A stretch of 64,000 nucleotides of DNA, from positions 1 through 64,000 of IMG/VR virus record IMGVR_UViG_3300024503_000015; one strand, written 5' to 3'. The number at the start of each line of letters is the position of its first letter. The first letter of the stretch is position 1. This document shows positions 3,261-9,205 of this stretch, piece by piece. Position numbers and translations under genes: made by a program. Under the pieces are notes generated by a model. That model searched no databases and had not been told where the DNA came from. It was given only the letters and a program-made list of their open reading frames with translations.

Positions 3261-4208
3261 TTATACTTTAATTTTAATGTGTTTGCAATCTTGCCATTGC
3301 CAATTCCAAATACGATTTCGTGTATGATAGGCCACTGCTCCTATACTGCTACTAGGATCGCCTGGATTAGGCAAACTCCAGATATAGTCAAACTTTGGTT
3401 CAACTACACTGGCATTGGCCTTACTGTTCATAGCACAGCCGCCCATATAGACTAGACAGTCTGCACCAGTTAGATCTTTGGCTGTACGCATAACCATATC
3501 AACCTGTTCTGTGAACACTTCCTGTACAGCGGCCGCTATGTCACACTGGTCCTGAAGATTTCTAATTTCGTGCGGCCAATCGTTGATGCCTCTGTGCATA
3601 TTTTTATGAGCATACACCAATGTGCCCATGTATTCTTTTACATCAAAATATACACGATCAGGATCACCTTGGTCACTCATCTGTTGTAGTAGATGTTCCT
3701 GTTTAATTGGTTCTAGTCCGCATAACTTTGTAAACGCACTATAGAATAACCCCAAACTGTGGGGATAAGTGCGACTCCAAACCTTCTTAAGTTCTCCGTG
3801 CTTACCTTCCCAGATAGTTGCACATTCAAATTCGCCTATAGCGTCGAGAACTACCACAGCACAGTGATTAAATGGGCTAGTGTAATAGCCTGAGGCGGCA
3901 TGACTGGCATGATGTGGAGTATAGGTCACTGGAGCATAGTGTACTCTTATTTTATTCAAGTAGCGTCCGGGTAGCACCGACATATCCAATGCTGTTTTAT
4001 ATTGTCCAGCGTAGACCTGTCTTGCTTTTTTAACCCAAGGACGTTCGTACCAAAAAATTCTATCAGGTGCACCGTGATGTAGTGCTTCTGTTATAACGGC
4101 TGTGTCAAACTCATCTTCTTTGCAACTAACCCAAGATTGAAGAGCGCCATTTTTAAACACAGCCAGGCTACTGCCGTGATTAAGAGCGTTAATACCCCAG
4201 TGAATCAT
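3261..4208 (-). CDS. carbamoyltransferase (NodU/CmcH family), N-terminal Kae1-like domain only
   Basis: HHASHAASGYYTSPF, DAIGE, SLGLFYSAFT, GGCAMN, PNPGD motifs; 315 aa with no C-terminal domain. Confidence 0.85.
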   Translation of the reverse strand: MIHWGINALNHGSSLAVFKNGALQSWVSCKEDEFDTAVITEALHHGAPDRIFWYERPWVKKARQVYAGQYKTALDMSVLPGRYLNKIRVHYAPVTYTPHHASHAASGYYTSPFNHCAVVVLDAIGEFECATIWEGKHGELKKVWSRTYPHSLGLFYSAFTKLCGLEPIKQEHLLQQMSDQGDPDRVYFDVKEYMGTLVYAHKNMHRGINDWPHEIRNLQDQCDIAAAVQEVFTEQVDMVMRTAKDLTGADCLVYMGGCAMNSKANASVVEPKFDYIWSLPNPGDPSSSIGAVAYHTRNRIWNWQWQDCKHIKIKV

Positions 4209-4309
4209 TTGTAGATATATGGATCCTTCTTGCGAAGAGCTTCCATCCTTTTCTTGAATTTTCTATCTTCAAAGAACTTTTTAATTCTTGCTATTAATTT
4301 AAGAACCAT
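4205..4309 (-). CDS. 34-aa basic peptide coupled to the carbamoyltransferase (not in ORF track)
   Basis: MVLKLIARIKKFFEDRKFKKRMEALRKKDPYIYK; its TGA overlaps the carbamoyltransferase ATG (ATGA). Confidence 0.65.
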   Translation of the reverse strand: MVLKLIARIKKFFEDRKFKKRMEALRKKDPYIYK

Positions 4310-5289
4310 TGTTTTGCCTTTAGTTTAATTTTTAATTCTGTGTCTTCTGTTTCGGACACAATCTTATATAAGGTCTGTAAGCGACCTAATTTTTTAACTG
4401 CATCATTGACGTCTTTAACACCTTCGGGCCAACTGGGCATACTAACGCTGTATCTGTTAGCAATAGCCTGTTCAACTGTGCGCTTTCCATCTGCGTCCCT
4501 GTCTGGAACAACAATAACCTTGCGGCCAAGTCTATTGATTAGCAGAGCCTGTTTATCCATGATTTCTGCGCCAAGGATTGCAACTGCATCTATACTTAGT
4601 GCGTCTACAGGACCTTCGACTACTATCACGAATTCCCTGTCCTGTGTTTGACAGTCCAAATTAAACACATATCCAGGAGTTTGATCCGATATGTATTTGG
4701 GTTTACCTTCTATAACTTTACGAGCAGTATGCCCAACAATACGTCCGTCTAATCTAAATGGTATAATTAATCTATCAGCAAACCCTGCCACAGGACACCA
4801 ATAAAAATCATCCAATGGATTTAAGTTTCTGGACCATACATATTCAACTACTGTGTCAAATTGTGCTCTAAGATCCGCGGGTAATTTTGTTAAATGTTCC
4901 AGCCATTCTTTAATTTGTAGACTGCCTTCGGGCAATGGTTTATCTTCAAACTTAGGAATAGTAACTGCTTCCAATGCCTGTTCATCGGATTGGATCTTTA
5001 GTGCTTCTAAAGTAATTTTATTAATGACATCGTCAGGTGCGCCCATCCAACTTAATAGATTACGCATCTTACGAGTTAAATGTCTGCCTGGTTGATAACT
5101 GGCTTTGTAGCCGCAGTTGAAGCAATGATAACTAATACCATCGCCATTTTGAATCATACCACCACGCTGTCTAGTATCTGCTGTTGTGCCATTATGGTGA
5201 CAGCAGACCGCGTTAAACTTTACCCAACCACTGGGTGTTTGTTTCCGTTTTGCAGGGAGGTACGAATAGATTATCTCACCAATACTCAT
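4294..5289 (-). CDS. gp61: DNA primase (T4 gp61-like)
   Basis: Zn-binding CC..HCFNC, TOPRIM VEGPVDA and PDRDADG, KDVND. Confidence 0.9.
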   Translation of the reverse strand: MSIGEIIYSYLPAKRKQTPSGWVKFNAVCCHHNGTTADTRQRGGMIQNGDGISYHCFNCGYKASYQPGRHLTRKMRNLLSWMGAPDDVINKITLEALKIQSDEQALEAVTIPKFEDKPLPEGSLQIKEWLEHLTKLPADLRAQFDTVVEYVWSRNLNPLDDFYWCPVAGFADRLIIPFRLDGRIVGHTARKVIEGKPKYISDQTPGYVFNLDCQTQDREFVIVVEGPVDALSIDAVAILGAEIMDKQALLINRLGRKVIVVPDRDADGKRTVEQAIANRYSVSMPSWPEGVKDVNDAVKKLGRLQTLYKIVSETEDTELKIKLKAKQWFLN

Positions 5290-5299
5290 ATAGAGTATT

Positions 5300-6403
5300 T
5301 TAGTTTCTTACTATTACTTTGTCAACTTTTCCGGTAAAACCTGTTCCAGCAACACTGGTATATGTTCTATCCGATGTGGATAAACTTGCTTCACCCAGAA
5401 TAGATGCAGACAGGATACTACGAGTATAACTTGGTAATGAACCGTAAATTGGTCCTTGGATGGCTGTTACTGTTACTATAGCATCATTGGCTGGACTTGT
5501 TCCGCCCAGTGACGTGCCTAATAGTTTAATCTTATCGCCAATATCATATTGTCTGCCACCGTCTGGTATGCCAACAATAGTGTATGTACTACCTAACTTT
5601 TGAATATCAAATGTTGCGGTGCTACTGCTACTAGATTTATTATAACCAAAACGCATAAATCTGTAACCTGTGTTTTCGATAACTTTGGTTACGCTACTTG
5701 CACTGGTAACTTCTACTGTATCAATTAATTTCCAAGTCACGCTAGATGCTGTGCTTTTATCTGAGGTTGCATAAACATTAACAAAACCGTTGAACGGATC
5801 TGTTGTATCTGGTACTACTTCAATTTCTACGCTACCAATTACTGTACTATCTGTGGCGGTACTGTAATCATCATTTAAGTAAGTGCCGAAAGGTACAATT
5901 TCACTTAAGAACTGATTACGGTCAAATTCAAAGTTAAAGACCTTTGCCACATCAATAATGTCACCAAAGCCGAGTTTTTCATTATAACCATCCATTAACT
6001 GTACATTGCCAAATAATTCAAATTGCCCGTCTACATAGATAGGACTGTTAGTTGTACCGTCTGTTAGATAAGCCGCCATGCGTAGCATCTGTGGGTCAAT
6101 GTCTGCTATTGTGCTACTGCTAATAGTCAGCGTCATCTGTCCTAATTGACTAGGAACTGCTATGGCTGTGGCAGTAAACAAGTTCTTCTGATCTGCGTCA
6201 AAGAACTTAACAACTGCGGTTTGACCTACCACTGTCTGCTTGCGTTGCTCTGAATTCCTAACATCTAATTGTATGGTATTATCAATACCTTTATATAATT
6301 TTAATTGGCGTTGGTACACTTGTCTATACTCCGTGTTGAATCCTACTCTATCTGTAGTAACAGTGATTTTATTTGGTACTAAATAAAACTGAATTTTTTG
6401 CAT
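5300..6403 (-). CDS. putative virion structural protein
   Basis: Beta-rich, Thr/Ser-rich; GGRQYDIGDKIKLLGTSLGG module; ATAAATA late box upstream. Confidence 0.55.
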   Translation of the reverse strand: MQKIQFYLVPNKITVTTDRVGFNTEYRQVYQRQLKLYKGIDNTIQLDVRNSEQRKQTVVGQTAVVKFFDADQKNLFTATAIAVPSQLGQMTLTISSSTIADIDPQMLRMAAYLTDGTTNSPIYVDGQFELFGNVQLMDGYNEKLGFGDIIDVAKVFNFEFDRNQFLSEIVPFGTYLNDDYSTATDSTVIGSVEIEVVPDTTDPFNGFVNVYATSDKSTASSVTWKLIDTVEVTSASSVTKVIENTGYRFMRFGYNKSSSSSTATFDIQKLGSTYTIVGIPDGGRQYDIGDKIKLLGTSLGGTSPANDAIVTVTAIQGPIYGSLPSYTRSILSASILGEASLSTSDRTYTSVAGTGFTGKVDKVIVRN

Positions 6404-6436: not shown

Positions 6437-6443
6437 TATTTAT
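6437..6443 (-). promoter_or_regulatory. T4-type late promoter box
   Basis: CATAAATACT on the - strand upstream of 5300..6403. Confidence 0.6.
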
Positions 6444-6813
6444 GGTAAAATTAACGGAAGACATCAGAGAAAACTTCCCCTTTATTTCAGTAGTTCATTA
6501 TGGCGGGCTAGAATACGTAGGCATCATTATTAATCAAGATCAATACGTTACTAGCCTTTACAATTACGAAGCACTAAAAACAGAAGAAGATCGCAAGAGT
6601 TTCCTGAGTCTGGGCGAAGCATGGTGGTGGGAAAGTAACCGTACAATTCCTATCAATATCTTCTTAAAATTAGAGATGGAGCAGTTCAAATACTCCGTAA
6701 TGACTATGAATACTAAAGATGTATCCGTAGTATTTGGCCCTACTATAAATCTTCACAACATTTCGATTAAGCGTGTAAAGCGTAAGGTAATACAGTTAGT
6801 TAGAAAACGTTAA
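6442..6813 (+). CDS. hypothetical protein
   Basis: 123-aa ORF filling the gap between - strand genes; WWWESNRTIPINIFL motif. Confidence 0.75.
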   Translation: MVKLTEDIRENFPFISVVHYGGLEYVGIIINQDQYVTSLYNYEALKTEEDRKSFLSLGEAWWWESNRTIPINIFLKLEMEQFKYSVMTMNTKDVSVVFGPTINLHNISIKRVKRKVIQLVRKR

Positions 6814-7388
6814 CTAAATCCGTAACTGATATTTTCACAGATTAAATTCATTTGCACAACTACTGCCTGAGCGTAAGCAATAGCGTGTGCCTTCTTAAAA
6901 TAGTATTCATCGTTCTCCGGTTTCGTCCATACTTCCTTCATCACCGAAGTCCATTCTTTCCCAATCAGATAACGTTTCGCCGGACGTATCATCGCTAGGA
7001 CTGCACCTAATTGCTCTATGCTCCGTGGTTTCATTTCTCTTAGAATAGAACCATAACCGTTGACGTGAAACAGCAGATTGTTGAAATCGTCTTGCTCCAA
7101 AAGATCCCATAAGGGTTCAGTCTCCATAAGTTGAATGAGATGCTGTTCATCTCGTACACCTTCGTAAATACCAACATTCAAGAAATCTATCTTGAAATAA
7201 CCTCTTGCTTCTGCTTCTTTATAATCTATTGTGCTTAGGCCTGTGGCAGGATTGTAAGGGATAGAAGTACAATATATGCCTGTGTTGTGCTTTTTAAAAC
7301 TACCATTATCTTCTATAGTCGCAACGACATGCTCTAATTTTTCTAGAGCTTTATTTCTGTCTGCAAAGTCTATGTCAATATCTGGCAT
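6810..7388 (-). CDS. minimal DNA polymerase III alpha (DnaE)-like catalytic protein
   Basis: PDIDIDF, KHNTGIY, KIDFLN, AMIRP, YYFKKAHAIAYA match DnaE palm/fingers motifs in order. Confidence 0.85.
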   Translation of the reverse strand: MPDIDIDFADRNKALEKLEHVVATIEDNGSFKKHNTGIYCTSIPYNPATGLSTIDYKEAEARGYFKIDFLNVGIYEGVRDEQHLIQLMETEPLWDLLEQDDFNNLLFHVNGYGSILREMKPRSIEQLGAVLAMIRPAKRYLIGKEWTSVMKEVWTKPENDEYYFKKAHAIAYAQAVVVQMNLICENISYGFS

Positions 7389-8122
7389 TATAAATTACCT
7401 TCTTTAACTACTTCGGCTATTAGTTCTTTGTCTGCGGGATATGTTCTGAATCGTCTTGCCCAATATTCTGGATCTAAAACTTCGAATACAATGTTTAATT
7501 GTTCGTCATTGAATTTGCCTAATAATGCCCTTCCGCTGTCACAGTTCAATACTAACCATGGACTAATCTTTCCGTCCTTGATTGCGTACACAGCTCGATT
7601 AACACTTACATACTTAAAGTAATGATTCCACTGGCTACTATTTTCATTTGCCCAGTCCATCATTGTAGTTATACTACGCTGTAAAGCCACTTCGGCAGGT
7701 TCTTTCTTTATTAAGTCTAGAACATATTTATAGTACAATTCTTCTCTACACCAGTGATCTAGTTTAACTCCACTGGTAACAACAAAGTCAATGTATCTAT
7801 CTGGATACAAGGGATTTACGTTGCTGAGAAAACTGCCAAACTTTACAAAGGCATTGTAGTAAGGACTTTTAGCAAACTCGTCATAAGTTTTAACGTGTTT
7901 GGCTTTCTGTGTCAGTTGAAAGAATCTAACATAGGTTTGATAGCCTAGTACAACGTGTTTTTCGTCTTTGGCCAAGTGTCTACGTTTTTGCTCACACATA
8001 TGGACCGTAAGGGTAGACTCTTTAACATAAGCACTACCGCAGTACTGACAAACGTATGGTTTTTCAACTGTGGACAATTTTATTTTAATTCCTTTGTGTT
8101 TCTCAAAAACATCTAAGTTCAT
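7388..8122 (-). CDS. zinc-finger protein of the replication cluster
   Basis: YVCQYCGSAYVKESTLTVHMC C2H2/C2HC-like finger; coupled to both neighbours. Confidence 0.65.
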   Translation of the reverse strand: MNLDVFEKHKGIKIKLSTVEKPYVCQYCGSAYVKESTLTVHMCEQKRRHLAKDEKHVVLGYQTYVRFFQLTQKAKHVKTYDEFAKSPYYNAFVKFGSFLSNVNPLYPDRYIDFVVTSGVKLDHWCREELYYKYVLDLIKKEPAEVALQRSITTMMDWANENSSQWNHYFKYVSVNRAVYAIKDGKISPWLVLNCDSGRALLGKFNDEQLNIVFEVLDPEYWARRFRTYPADKELIAEVVKEGNL

Positions 8123-8586
8123 AATGCCTTTTTAATATCTTTATCTTCCCAACCAAGATCCTTAAGACGTTGCTTAACTTCTTTTTCTGTAGTCATGCTA
8201 GACATAAGTTCGAGTTCGTCTTCTTTCAAGTGTGGATATAGTGTTTCCAATACTTTGATAACTTTACTGTTACCTTCTTTCTTTTTATATCCAATCCATT
8301 CGTGAAAATGAATTTTCTTTTCTTCATTACCAGTCATACAAACAAGATACCACAGTAACTTAGGATGCTTACTAAGACTAAAGTAATGCTTGTTAAAGTA
8401 CTCGTTAGTTTTGAAGATAGCCAACTCTTGCGTTTCTCTGTCGCTGGTTTTAATAGAGCTGGCATACCTAAGCAATAGATAAAGACTGATTTGCTTTCTC
8501 TGTTCTTCTGTGAAATTATCCCATAGATCTCTGGCGCCCATATCAATGGCCGCTGTTTCATCTTTGATAGTTAGTTTATCACTCAT
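8119..8586 (-). CDS. possible clamp loader small subunit (T4 gp62-like)
   Basis: Size and LLRYAS..NEYFN..HEWIGYKKK pattern reminiscent of gp62; replication context; start placed at MSDKL. Confidence 0.45.
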   Translation of the reverse strand: MSDKLTIKDETAAIDMGARDLWDNFTEEQRKQISLYLLLRYASSIKTSDRETQELAIFKTNEYFNKHYFSLSKHPKLLWYLVCMTGNEEKKIHFHEWIGYKKKEGNSKVIKVLETLYPHLKEDELELMSSMTTEKEVKQRLKDLGWEDKDIKKAL

Positions 8587-9205
8587 CTTTAGGAACAATC
8601 CTTACATCAAATGCCATTACAGTTCTATTACCCTTACCCTTCCAAGGATAAACTGTGTGTGGCAGATGGCTTGGAAATACAATAACAGTACCTGGTGTAG
8701 GTTTATATTTCCAATTATCTGTCATAATAAATTTACCAACATCTCTAGTTTGTGGTAATCTAAATGCTACATTGCCGTCTGTTGGAGACAAATTTTCATC
8801 TAAATCTGGAGCAGTGATATAAATGTTTCCGCTGATATTGCCGCCTGGATGTGTATGTAATTCTTGATAGTCTCCCTGCGTCTGACGAATAGTCCAGATG
8901 CTGGTAACAACAGGCTTACACAGTTTTAAATCTTCAGTTCCGCTTTGTGCTGTAATAATTTCCATGTAGCCAGTACAGATGTTTTCAATCCATTTGACTA
9001 ACCAAGAAACATCAATGTTTAGTTGATTAGGATATACTTGTATCTGCTGTCCTCCGCGAATACTAATAAATGGATTATCTGCATCATTCAATTCGGGGTG
9101 TCCGTGTAACATCTCAGACAGACTAAAAATTTGACTAAACTCAACTGGTGGTACTTGGTCAATAGCCAACACAGTTGGTTGAAAATATGCTACCTTTAAA
9201 CTCAT
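8579..9205 (-). CDS. 2OG-Fe(II) oxygenase (TIGR02466-like)
   Basis: HTH..ISGNIYI..FPSHLPHTVYP..R. Confidence 0.85.
   Translation of the reverse strand: MSLKVAYFQPTVLAIDQVPPVEFSQIFSLSEMLHGHPELNDADNPFISIRGGQQIQVYPNQLNIDVSWLVKWIENICTGYMEIITAQSGTEDLKLCKPVVTSIWTIRQTQGDYQELHTHPGGNISGNIYITAPDLDENLSPTDGNVAFRLPQTRDVGKFIMTDNWKYKPTPGTVIVFPSHLPHTVYPWKGKGNRTVMAFDVRIVPKDE

What the first reader, a model, noticed from the sequence alone, without database searches (positions are those of the whole stretch)
6810..7388. 192-aa minimal family-C (DnaE) polymerase in a T4-like replisome
Seen: the protein begins at the palm motif PDIDIDF and then has KHNTGIY, KIDFLN, AMIRP and YYFKKAHAIAYA in order. Known: these correspond to E. 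coli DnaE PDFDVDF (D401/D403), KFDFLGL (D555) and YGFNKSH in a ~1160-aa protein, while T4 itself uses a family-B polymerase. Here the spacing between the two Asp motifs is only about 60 aa, so the thumb appears largely deleted, and the PHP, clamp-binding and OB domains are absent. The clean start and stop and coupling to upstream genes argue against a pseudogene. Inference: this is either the catalytic subunit of a multi-piece polymerase, with the coupled Zn-finger (7388..8122) and gp62-like genes as partners, or a repurposed nucleotidyltransferase.
Basis: partly seen in the sequence, partly recalled or inferred. Interest (0 to 1): 0.7.

Follow-up and report, generated by a model that had tools for sequence, protein, structure and literature searches.

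The report
Half of a split mini-DnaE polymerase
This 192-residue gene is real and under strong selection, but it is one half of a two-gene, stripped-down relative of the bacterial replicative polymerase DnaE that a 2021 genomics paper already described in one group of giant phages, and whose biochemical activity has apparently never been tested.

Summary
It is homologous to the DnaE/PolC catalytic core by PHROG, profile and fold comparison. It is not a complete minimal polymerase, because it lacks the phosphate-binding G-R-G-S loop. That loop lies in a 168-aa protein ("piece A") encoded 184 kb away in the same 270-kb jumbo-phage record. Piece A ends exactly where this ORF ("piece B") begins relative to DnaE. 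Both pieces occur in the same phage lineages, always far apart and always split at the same point. A rare natural 375-aa fusion joins them in the expected order. A complex prediction scored 0.92 against 0.00 for the best control. Catalytic residues are near-invariant and dN/dS is 0.04-0.07. The thumb, about 98 finger residues, and the PHP, clamp-binding and OB domains are absent, also from three complete relatives. An intact family-B polymerase is present. Iyer et al. 2021 (PMC7824862) already described this split minimal Pol III alpha of group 2.2 jumbo phages. Activity remains untested.

The parts
6810..7388 (-). Piece B: the C-terminal subunit (192 aa) of the split minimal DnaE-like enzyme. 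It carries the metal-binding Asp triad (D3, D5, D68), K66, and compressed finger motifs (R135-P136, K165, H168).
   Evidence: Its partner, piece A, lies outside the window at G000:C1:191418-191924 on the minus strand (168 aa; PF07733 at 46.5 bits; invariant GxGRGSxxxS).
7398..7402 (-). Shine-Dalgarno-like GAAGG, 9 nt upstream of piece B's ATG. The ATG shares base 7388 with the TAA stop of the upstream ORF.
   Evidence: Read directly from the sequence. Function is inferred.
7388..8122 (-). Upstream C2H2-like Zn-finger protein (244 aa, PHROG 11058, function unknown). It is a core gene of the same phage clade and of the same gene module. Partnership with piece B is not shown.
6442..6813 (+). Convergent 123-aa ORF (PHROG 11637, function unknown) whose 3' end overlaps piece B's 3' end by 4 nt. 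The arrangement is conserved in PA5oct, RaK2, Atu_ph07 and next to the natural fusion gene.
4294..5289 (-). T4 gp61-type DNA primase (Toprim domain). It is a conserved near neighbour of piece B in distant relatives and marks the replication module.

Best explanation
The ORF encodes the C-terminal subunit (piece B) of a two-subunit minimal C-family (DnaE/PolC-like) nucleotidyltransferase that is conserved across 'group 2.2' jumbo phages. Piece B supplies the strand carrying the Asp-x-Asp-x-Asp motif, the Lys-x-Asp strand (the third carboxylate), and a shortened finger region with the R-P and K-x-x-H motifs. Piece A is 168 aa and is encoded 184 kb away, next to the clamp-loader module. It supplies the start of the palm and the G-R-G-S phosphate-binding loop. 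The two chains are predicted to pair edge to edge, with B residues 2-9 against A residues 131-134. This rebuilds one Pol-beta-type sheet with a composite two-metal active site, so neither chain alone should be able to catalyse. Homology, the split architecture, co-occurrence, purifying selection, the predicted heterodimer and the natural fusion are shown here by computation. It is inferred, not shown, that the enzyme performs template-directed DNA synthesis in an accessory role (gap filling, primer extension or repair) beside the phage's intact family-B replicase. I put the identity and assembly at about 0.9 and the DNA-polymerase activity at about 0.5.
For: Homology: PHROG 11778 matches at E 6e-67, and family profiles hit only DnaE chains. 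Fold mapping: B residues 1-190 superpose on E. coli DnaE 400-784 (Z 8.9), Taq 461-841 (Z 9.7) and PolC 971-1299 (Z 9.5). A residues 61-168 superpose on E. coli DnaE 272-393 (Z 8.3) and M. tuberculosis DnaE1 303-413 (Z 10.5). Junction: A ends at ...EFLR, corresponding to DnaE 392, and B starts at MPDIDIDF, corresponding to DnaE 399/400. The split point is the same in PA5oct, Atu_ph07 and RaK2. Co-occurrence: B is in 96 phage records and A in 109, of which 14 are Bacillus phage records (those listed are annotated as DNA polymerase III alpha subunit); counts per host genus are otherwise nearly identical, and the two genes lie 14-224 kb apart. Fusion: three natural 375-376-aa clusters join A and B in that order, and PF07733 reads through the junction. 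Complex: score 0.92 against a best control of 0.00; this mark was reached by 58 of 80 solved complexes and 2 of 110 mismatched pairs, and the counts hold only roughly here because my own alignments were used; runs agree in at least 99% of contacts and the partner's pLDDT is at least 92. Conservation: in B, D3, D5, K66, D68 and P136 are invariant, and D7, H34, G37, R135, K165 and H168 are at least 90% conserved across 83-87 sequences that are at most 50% identical. In A, G134, G136, R137, G138, S139 and S143 are invariant. Selection: dN/dS is 0.04-0.07. Completeness: no further DnaE pieces and no PHP domain in three complete relatives. Context: B lies near the primase and A near the RFC-type clamp loader in all lineages examined. 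Literature: Iyer et al. 2021 reached the same reading independently.
Against: No biochemical data exist for any member in the literature I could search. The thumb is missing: about 84 residues between B 8 and B 55 relative to DnaE. About 98 finger residues (DnaE 641-739) are also missing. From my memory of the Pol III alpha literature, that finger segment holds arginines that bind the incoming dNTP, so a processive templated polymerase is not assured. There is no clamp-binding or OB domain, and an intact PolB with an exonuclease domain is present. The complex score may partly reflect the model's memory of DnaE's own intramolecular packing. The RNA-library evidence cannot exclude DNA carry-over.
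Confidence: 0.8

Rival explanations
1. The A+B heterodimer forms as described, but it is a repurposed nucleotidyltransferase rather than a template-copying DNA polymerase. It might add nucleotides without a template, extend or modify primers, tail RNA, or make a nucleotide signal.
For: The thumb, about 98 finger residues, and the clamp-binding and OB domains are lost. An intact PolB replicase is already present. The Pol-beta nucleotidyltransferase superfamily includes many enzymes that are not polymerases (established knowledge).
Against: The retained finger motifs (R-P, K-x-x-H), which Iyer et al. assign to template binding, are near-invariant. Both genes sit in replication modules across distant phages. 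No effector-type or signalling neighbours were seen.
Confidence: 0.3
2. One reading: the 192-aa protein is itself the minimal catalytic polymerase, working alone or with the translationally coupled Zn-finger and 'gp62-like' neighbours.
For: The Zn-finger gene's stop codon overlaps piece B's start codon. The Zn-finger family has the same phyletic range as piece B, 93 against 96 records.
Against: Piece B lacks the GS phosphate-binding loop that defines the Pol-beta-type active site; piece A carries it. Adjacency to the Zn-finger gene is lost in most lineages, and even in a relative whose piece B is 92% identical. ORF 8119-8598 has no clamp-loader match. The natural fusion joins B to A, not to the Zn-finger protein.
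Confidence: 0.05
3. The two ORFs are decaying fragments of a once full-length DnaE (pseudogenes or an assembly artefact), or they are rejoined by a split intein or by RNA or DNA joining.
For: The pieces are colinear with DnaE and carry large deletions.
Against: At least 7,987 clusters at 90% identity are of uniform 192-210 aa length. dN/dS is 0.04-0.07. The catalytic residues are invariant. There is no intein or Hint domain, and no extra sequence at the junction. Each piece has its own start and stop codon. No joined form appears in the RNA-library contigs.
Confidence: 0.01

Closest known systems
Split minimal DNA polymerase III alpha of group 2.2 jumbo phages (Iyer, Anantharaman, Krishnan, Burroughs and Aravind 2021, Viruses 13:63, PMC7824862; PHROG 11778 for the C-piece)
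   Same: The match holds in every respect tested. There are two distantly encoded genes. The N-piece binds NTP, and the C-piece binds Mg2+ and the template. The enzyme accompanies a family-B polymerase. No other Pol III domains are present. The relatives are the same (Atu_ph07, RaK2-like and PA5oct-like phages).
   Different: There is no difference in kind. This copy comes from an uncultured riverine phage and is at most 52% identical to the copies in cultured phages. Three results here go beyond that paper: a rare natural single-chain fusion, a controlled heterodimer prediction, and residue-level mapping of the deletions.
Bacterial DnaE (Pol III alpha) and PolC, the family-C replicative polymerases
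   Same: The Pol-beta-type palm has the GS loop and three carboxylates. The finger motifs R-P-G and Y-G-F-N-K-S-H are colinear. The fold match reaches Z 8-11 and is exclusive to this family.
   Different: The phage enzyme has about 360 residues in two chains, against about 1,160 in one chain. It has no PHP domain, thumb, clamp-binding domain or OB fold, and about 98 finger residues are deleted. Piece A has an N-terminal 60 residues with no DnaE counterpart.
Split-intein DnaE of cyanobacteria (DnaE-n / DnaE-c)
   Same: DnaE is encoded as two distant genes.
   Different: There are no intein halves here and the split site is different. Assembly is presumably non-covalent. The protein is a minimal core rather than a full-length DnaE.

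Membership tests
Split minimal Pol III alpha of group 2.2 jumbo phages (Iyer et al. 2021) | The C-piece carries the Mg2+-binding Asp residues and the template-binding finger motifs, in a protein of about 190 aa | tested here: met
   PHROG 11778 at E 6e-67. D3, D5 and D68 are invariant, and R135-P136, K165 and H168 are conserved.
Split minimal Pol III alpha of group 2.2 jumbo phages (Iyer et al. 2021) | A separate N-piece with the NTP-binding loop is encoded at a distant locus of the same genome | tested here: met
   G000:C1:191418-191924, 168 aa. PF07733 at 46.5 bits, above its cut-off. GVGRGSS is present. The gene lies 184 kb away.
Split minimal Pol III alpha of group 2.2 jumbo phages (Iyer et al. 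2021) | It accompanies a family-B polymerase, and no other Pol III domains are in the genome | tested here: met
   A PolB of 889 aa has exonuclease and polymerase domains. There is no PHP domain and no further DnaE piece in this genome or in three complete relatives.
Split minimal Pol III alpha of group 2.2 jumbo phages (Iyer et al. 2021) | The two pieces reconstitute one enzyme | tested here: inconclusive
   Prediction only. The score was 0.92 against 0.00 for the best control; 58 of 80 solved complexes and 2 of 110 mismatched pairs reached the mark; runs agree in at least 99% of contacts; the partner's pLDDT is at least 92. A natural fusion also supports it. No experiment exists.
Family-C DNA polymerase (DnaE/PolC) | A Pol-beta-type palm with a GS loop and three catalytic carboxylates | tested here: met
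   Met only by the A+B composite. Piece B alone lacks the GS loop.
Family-C DNA polymerase (DnaE/PolC) | An N-terminal PHP domain | tested here: not met
   No PF02811 match in this genome or in three complete relatives, while all 14 control genomes matched.
Family-C DNA polymerase (DnaE/PolC) | A thumb and a complete fingers domain | tested here: not met
   B residues 8-55 stand for DnaE 408-539, and B residues 140-151 stand for DnaE 641-739. About 84 and about 98 residues are therefore absent.
Family-C DNA polymerase (DnaE/PolC) | Clamp-binding and OB domains on a single polypeptide | tested here: not met
   The full-length DnaE profile phrog_405 matches only positions 359-429 and 442-809. 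The protein ends 19 residues after the K-x-x-H motif region.
Family-C DNA polymerase (DnaE/PolC) | Template-directed DNA polymerase activity | not testable with these tools
   This needs a primer-extension assay.
Split-intein DnaE | Intein N- and C-halves flank the split | tested here: not met
   No Hint or intein domain was found. DnaE homology runs to the last residue of A and starts at the first residue of B.

The most novel reading that the evidence does not exclude
The A+B pair, or its natural 375-aa single-chain fusion, is a true template-copying DNA polymerase. It would work without a thumb, PHP domain, clamp-binding domain or OB domain, and would be by far the smallest family-C polymerase. 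It would act as a second, specialised polymerase in a PolB-based T4-like replisome, for example in primer hand-off, lagging-strand synthesis or gap repair.
Probability: 0.35. Interest if true: 0.75.

Novelty: already known. Interest (0 to 1): 0.35.

Why it matters
A family-C catalytic core of about 360 residues would define the minimum needed for this polymerase architecture. It would give a tractable model for how Pol III alpha evolved, which is Iyer et al.'s argument. It would also show a phage replisome that combines a family-B polymerase of the kind typical of archaea and eukaryotes with a bacterial-type polymerase. The family is very abundant in environmental phages, with thousands of 90% clusters, yet I found no published biochemical test of any member. 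The natural fusion identified here offers a single-chain construct for that first test. As a discovery the finding is not new, because both the family and its split architecture were published in 2021.

Tried and rejected
1. The Zn-finger and the presumed 'gp62-like' neighbours as partners. Adjacency is not conserved and there is no clamp-loader signature.
2. Modelling the natural fusion as one chain with a mixed alignment of A and B pieces. In A6, MAFFT laid the A pieces over the C-half (checked). A7 showed the same signs in its summary, with its only invariant column in the C-half. I used neither alignment.
3. Adding PA5oct, RaK2 and Atu_ph07 sequences to the structure jobs.
4. Expression evidence. 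Riverine metatranscriptome contigs cover both loci exactly, but coverage is even across all genes and DNA carry-over cannot be excluded.
5. The PA5oct omics paper does not mention either gene.
6. Three literature searches found no experimental follow-up.
7. The careful tree search did not finish in time, so only the quick tree was used.
8. Pseudogene, assembly-artefact and split-intein readings were rejected; see the rival explanations.

Full report
OBSERVATION. The ORF at window 6810-7388 lies on the minus strand, runs from ATG to TAA and encodes 192 aa. The D5-to-D68 spacing is 63 residues. The start ATG shares one base with the TAA stop of the upstream Zn-finger ORF, and a GAAGG lies 9 nt upstream.

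HOMOLOGY TO DnaE. By single-sequence search the similarity is weak: Pfam gives only a sub-threshold DNA_pol3_finger match. phmmer against the PDB gives four colinear patches on M. tuberculosis DnaE1 at E 0.23, including an identical MPDIDIDF. With better tools the similarity is decisive.
- PHROG 11778, a 197-position family labelled 'DNA polymerase', matches at E 6e-67.
- A profile of the family hits only DnaE chains, at E 3e-5. Residues 55-140 align to E. coli DnaE 539-641 and residues 151-182 to 739-771.
- An AlphaFold model has pLDDT 96.4 and pTM 0.88. Its top 17 Foldseek matches are all DnaE, with PolC at rank 20.
- VIA-align fits 184-188 of the 192 residues onto E. coli DnaE 400-784 (Z 8.9), Taq 461-841 (Z 9.7), M. 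tuberculosis 419-811 (Z 9.6) and PolC 971-1299 (Z 9.5). The next unrelated chain scores Z 2.9.

WHAT THE ORF LACKS, AND WHERE IT IS. The window is part of a 270,181-bp virus record estimated to be 71% complete. Searching that record with the DnaE palm family PF07733 and with a full-length DnaE profile found one further locus, at G000:C1:191418-191924 on the minus strand. It is a 168-aa ORF, which I call piece A.
- It scores 46.5 bits against PF07733, whose cut-off is 23.9.
- It contains GVGRGSSVASY, the counterpart of DnaE's GRGSGAGS phosphate-binding loop.
- It ends at ...DWREFLR. In profile alignment this corresponds to E. coli DnaE ...FERFL (392).
- The window ORF, piece B, begins at the MPDFDVDF equivalent (399/400).
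- A model of piece A (pLDDT 87.5) superposes residues 61-168 on E. coli DnaE 272-393 (Z 8.3), M. tuberculosis 303-413 (Z 10.5) and PolC 817-964 (Z 10.8). Residues 1-60 have no DnaE counterpart.
Together, A and B cover DnaE residues 272-784. About 84 residues are missing between the Asp-x-Asp strand and the KHxxG strand. From my memory of Lamers et al. 2006, this is the thumb, residues 433-510. About 98 finger residues (641-739) are also missing. Piece B alone therefore lacks one of the two signature elements of a Pol-beta-type active site.

THE SPLIT IS ANCIENT, CONSERVED AND FUNCTIONAL.
- tblastn finds piece B in 96 phage records and piece A in 109. Fourteen of the A records are Bacillus phage records; those listed are annotated as DNA polymerase III alpha subunit, and I take them to be full-length DnaE genes. 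Counts per host genus are otherwise nearly identical.
- In the relatives listed the two genes lie on the same strand and are far apart: 14 kb in Xoo-sp13, 15 kb in XacN1, 31 kb in 121Q, 33 kb in RaK2, 43 kb in PA5oct, 116 kb in SCTP-2, 182 kb in Atu_ph07, 224 kb in Phosso and 184 kb here.
- Piece A ends at the same (E/D)FL(R/K) in PA5oct, Atu_ph07 and RaK2.
- Three complete relatives contain exactly these two DnaE-like loci and no PHP domain.
- In metagenomes, each piece has at least about 8,000 clusters at 90% identity. Lengths are uniform: 192-210 aa for B and 165-172 aa for A.
- Across 83-87 representatives that are at most 50% identical, D3, D5, K66, D68 and P136 are invariant. D7, H34, G37, R135, K138, K165 and H168 are at least 90% conserved.
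- In piece A, G134, G136, R137, G138, S139 and S143 are invariant.
- dN/dS for piece B against three relatives is 0.04-0.07. The least saturated pair gives dS 1.18 and dN 0.047.

EVIDENCE THAT A AND B ACT TOGETHER.
1. A natural fusion exists. P0359 (375 aa) aligns to piece A over residues 14-180 (37% identity, E 9e-21) and to piece B over residues 189-370 (32% identity, E 5e-34), with about 8 linker residues between them. PF07733 reads continuously through the junction, over residues 97-207. Three such clusters come from independent assemblies. The gene sits at the B locus, next to a homologue of window ORF 6442-6813.
2. The fusion looks derived. In a quick maximum-likelihood tree, the three fusions form one clade (support 100). 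That clade is nested in a well-supported clade (96) of split-sized proteins, so the fusion looks like a late re-joining. The tree is midpoint-rooted and the careful search did not finish.
3. A complex prediction of A with B scored 0.92 against a best control of 0.00. This mark was reached by 58 of 80 solved complexes and 2 of 110 mismatched pairs, and the counts hold only roughly here because my own alignments were used. The runs agree in at least 99% of their contacts, and the partner's pLDDT is at least 92.
4. The lowest-error contacts pair B residues 6-8 with A residues 133-134. That places the Asp-bearing strand beside the strand that leads into the GRGS loop, as in a canonical Pol-beta-type sheet.
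The pass may partly reflect the model's memory of DnaE's own fold, so it supports binding but does not prove it.

CONTEXT.
- The phage has an intact family-B polymerase of 889 aa with exonuclease and polymerase domains.
- Piece B lies in a conserved module with a convergent 123-aa ORF, a protein annotated as structural in relatives, and the gp61-type primase.
- Piece A lies in a module with Cpn10, a MazG-like protein and the RFC-type clamp loader.
It is directly adjacent only here and in PA5oct-like phages. It is 350-1160 bp away in RaK2, 121Q, Atu_ph07 and Phosso, and about 10 kb away in Xoo-sp13 and CM1. An extra 60-aa ORF separates the two genes in a relative whose piece B is 92% identical.
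- Riverine metatranscriptome contigs match both loci exactly and show no joined form. Coverage is even across all genes and DNA carry-over is not excluded, so this is weak evidence for expression.

MECHANISM. The shown steps, all computational, are the homology, the split, the co-occurrence, the purifying selection, the predicted heterodimer and the fusion. From these I infer an obligate heterodimer with a composite two-metal active site. Piece A positions the triphosphate through the GRGS loop. Piece B binds the metals through D3, D5 and D68, and binds nucleic acid through the retained finger helices. Template-directed DNA synthesis as an accessory to PolB is plausible, given the retained finger motifs and the replication-module context, but it is unproven. 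Loss of the thumb, of part of the fingers, and of the clamp-binding and OB domains keeps a non-polymerase nucleotidyltransferase role open. I put that rival at about 0.3.

COMPARISON WITH WHAT IS KNOWN. Iyer et al. 2021 (PMC7824862, sections 3.4.1 and 3.5 and Figure 3b) already described this feature. [quoted passage not shown] They proposed that it cooperates with PolB in synthesising one strand or in repair. My analysis reproduces this independently. It adds the natural fusion, the controlled heterodimer prediction, the residue-level deletion map, the dN/dS values and the scale of the family in metagenomes. I found no experimental follow-up.

VERDICT. The feature is already known, and this copy is an ordinary member from an uncultured riverine jumbo phage. 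Interest is moderate to low as a discovery, because the family was published in 2021. The untested biochemistry is still an open question.

Noticed in passing
L014:1066-2193 (ENA metagenome contig, 25% GC); proteins P0359, P0391 and P0392: These are natural single-chain fusions of piece A and piece B, 375-376 aa long. They sit at the B locus of an AT-rich relative and are nested among split forms in the tree. Iyer et al. 2021 do not mention them.
   Followed up: yes
window 6442-6813 (+): This 123-aa ORF of unknown function (PHROG 11637) converges on piece B, and their 3' ends overlap by 4 nt. The same tail-to-tail overlap is kept in PA5oct (17 nt), RaK2 (17 nt) and Atu_ph07 (14 nt), and a homologue lies beside the fusion gene.
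   Followed up: partly
G000:C1:191745-191924 (residues 1-60 of piece A; outside the window): The N-terminal ~60 residues of piece A have no counterpart in DnaE or PolC structures. In the predicted complex they contact piece B (B residues 40-48). They may stand in for a missing domain.
   Followed up: partly
window 7388-8122 (-): This 244-aa protein has an N-terminal C2H2-like zinc finger (PHROG 11058). It is a core gene of the same phage clade and is found only in viruses by the Atlas search. Its function is unknown.
   Followed up: partly
window 3261-4208 (-): This 315-aa ORF matches the carbamoyltransferase N-terminal domain (PF02543, E 1e-27). It lies just downstream of the primase gene, which is an unusual enzyme to find in a replication module.
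   Followed up: no
window 8579-9205 (-): This 2OG-Fe(II) oxygenase (PF13759, E 3e-19) lies two genes upstream of the Zn-finger gene, counting the intervening ORF 8119-8598. Close relatives (L015-L017) keep it in that position.
   Followed up: no
window 5300-6403 (-): This 367-aa ORF has no Pfam or PHROG match. It occupies the position between piece B and the primase where PA5oct, RaK2 and Atu_ph07 have a protein annotated as a virion structural protein.
   Followed up: no
hit H220 (Alishewanella phage Slickus01, 141,644-bp record): A piece B homologue (32% identity) occurs in a phage record well below the 200-kb jumbo threshold. The family may therefore not be limited to jumbo phages, or the record may be partial.
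   Followed up: no
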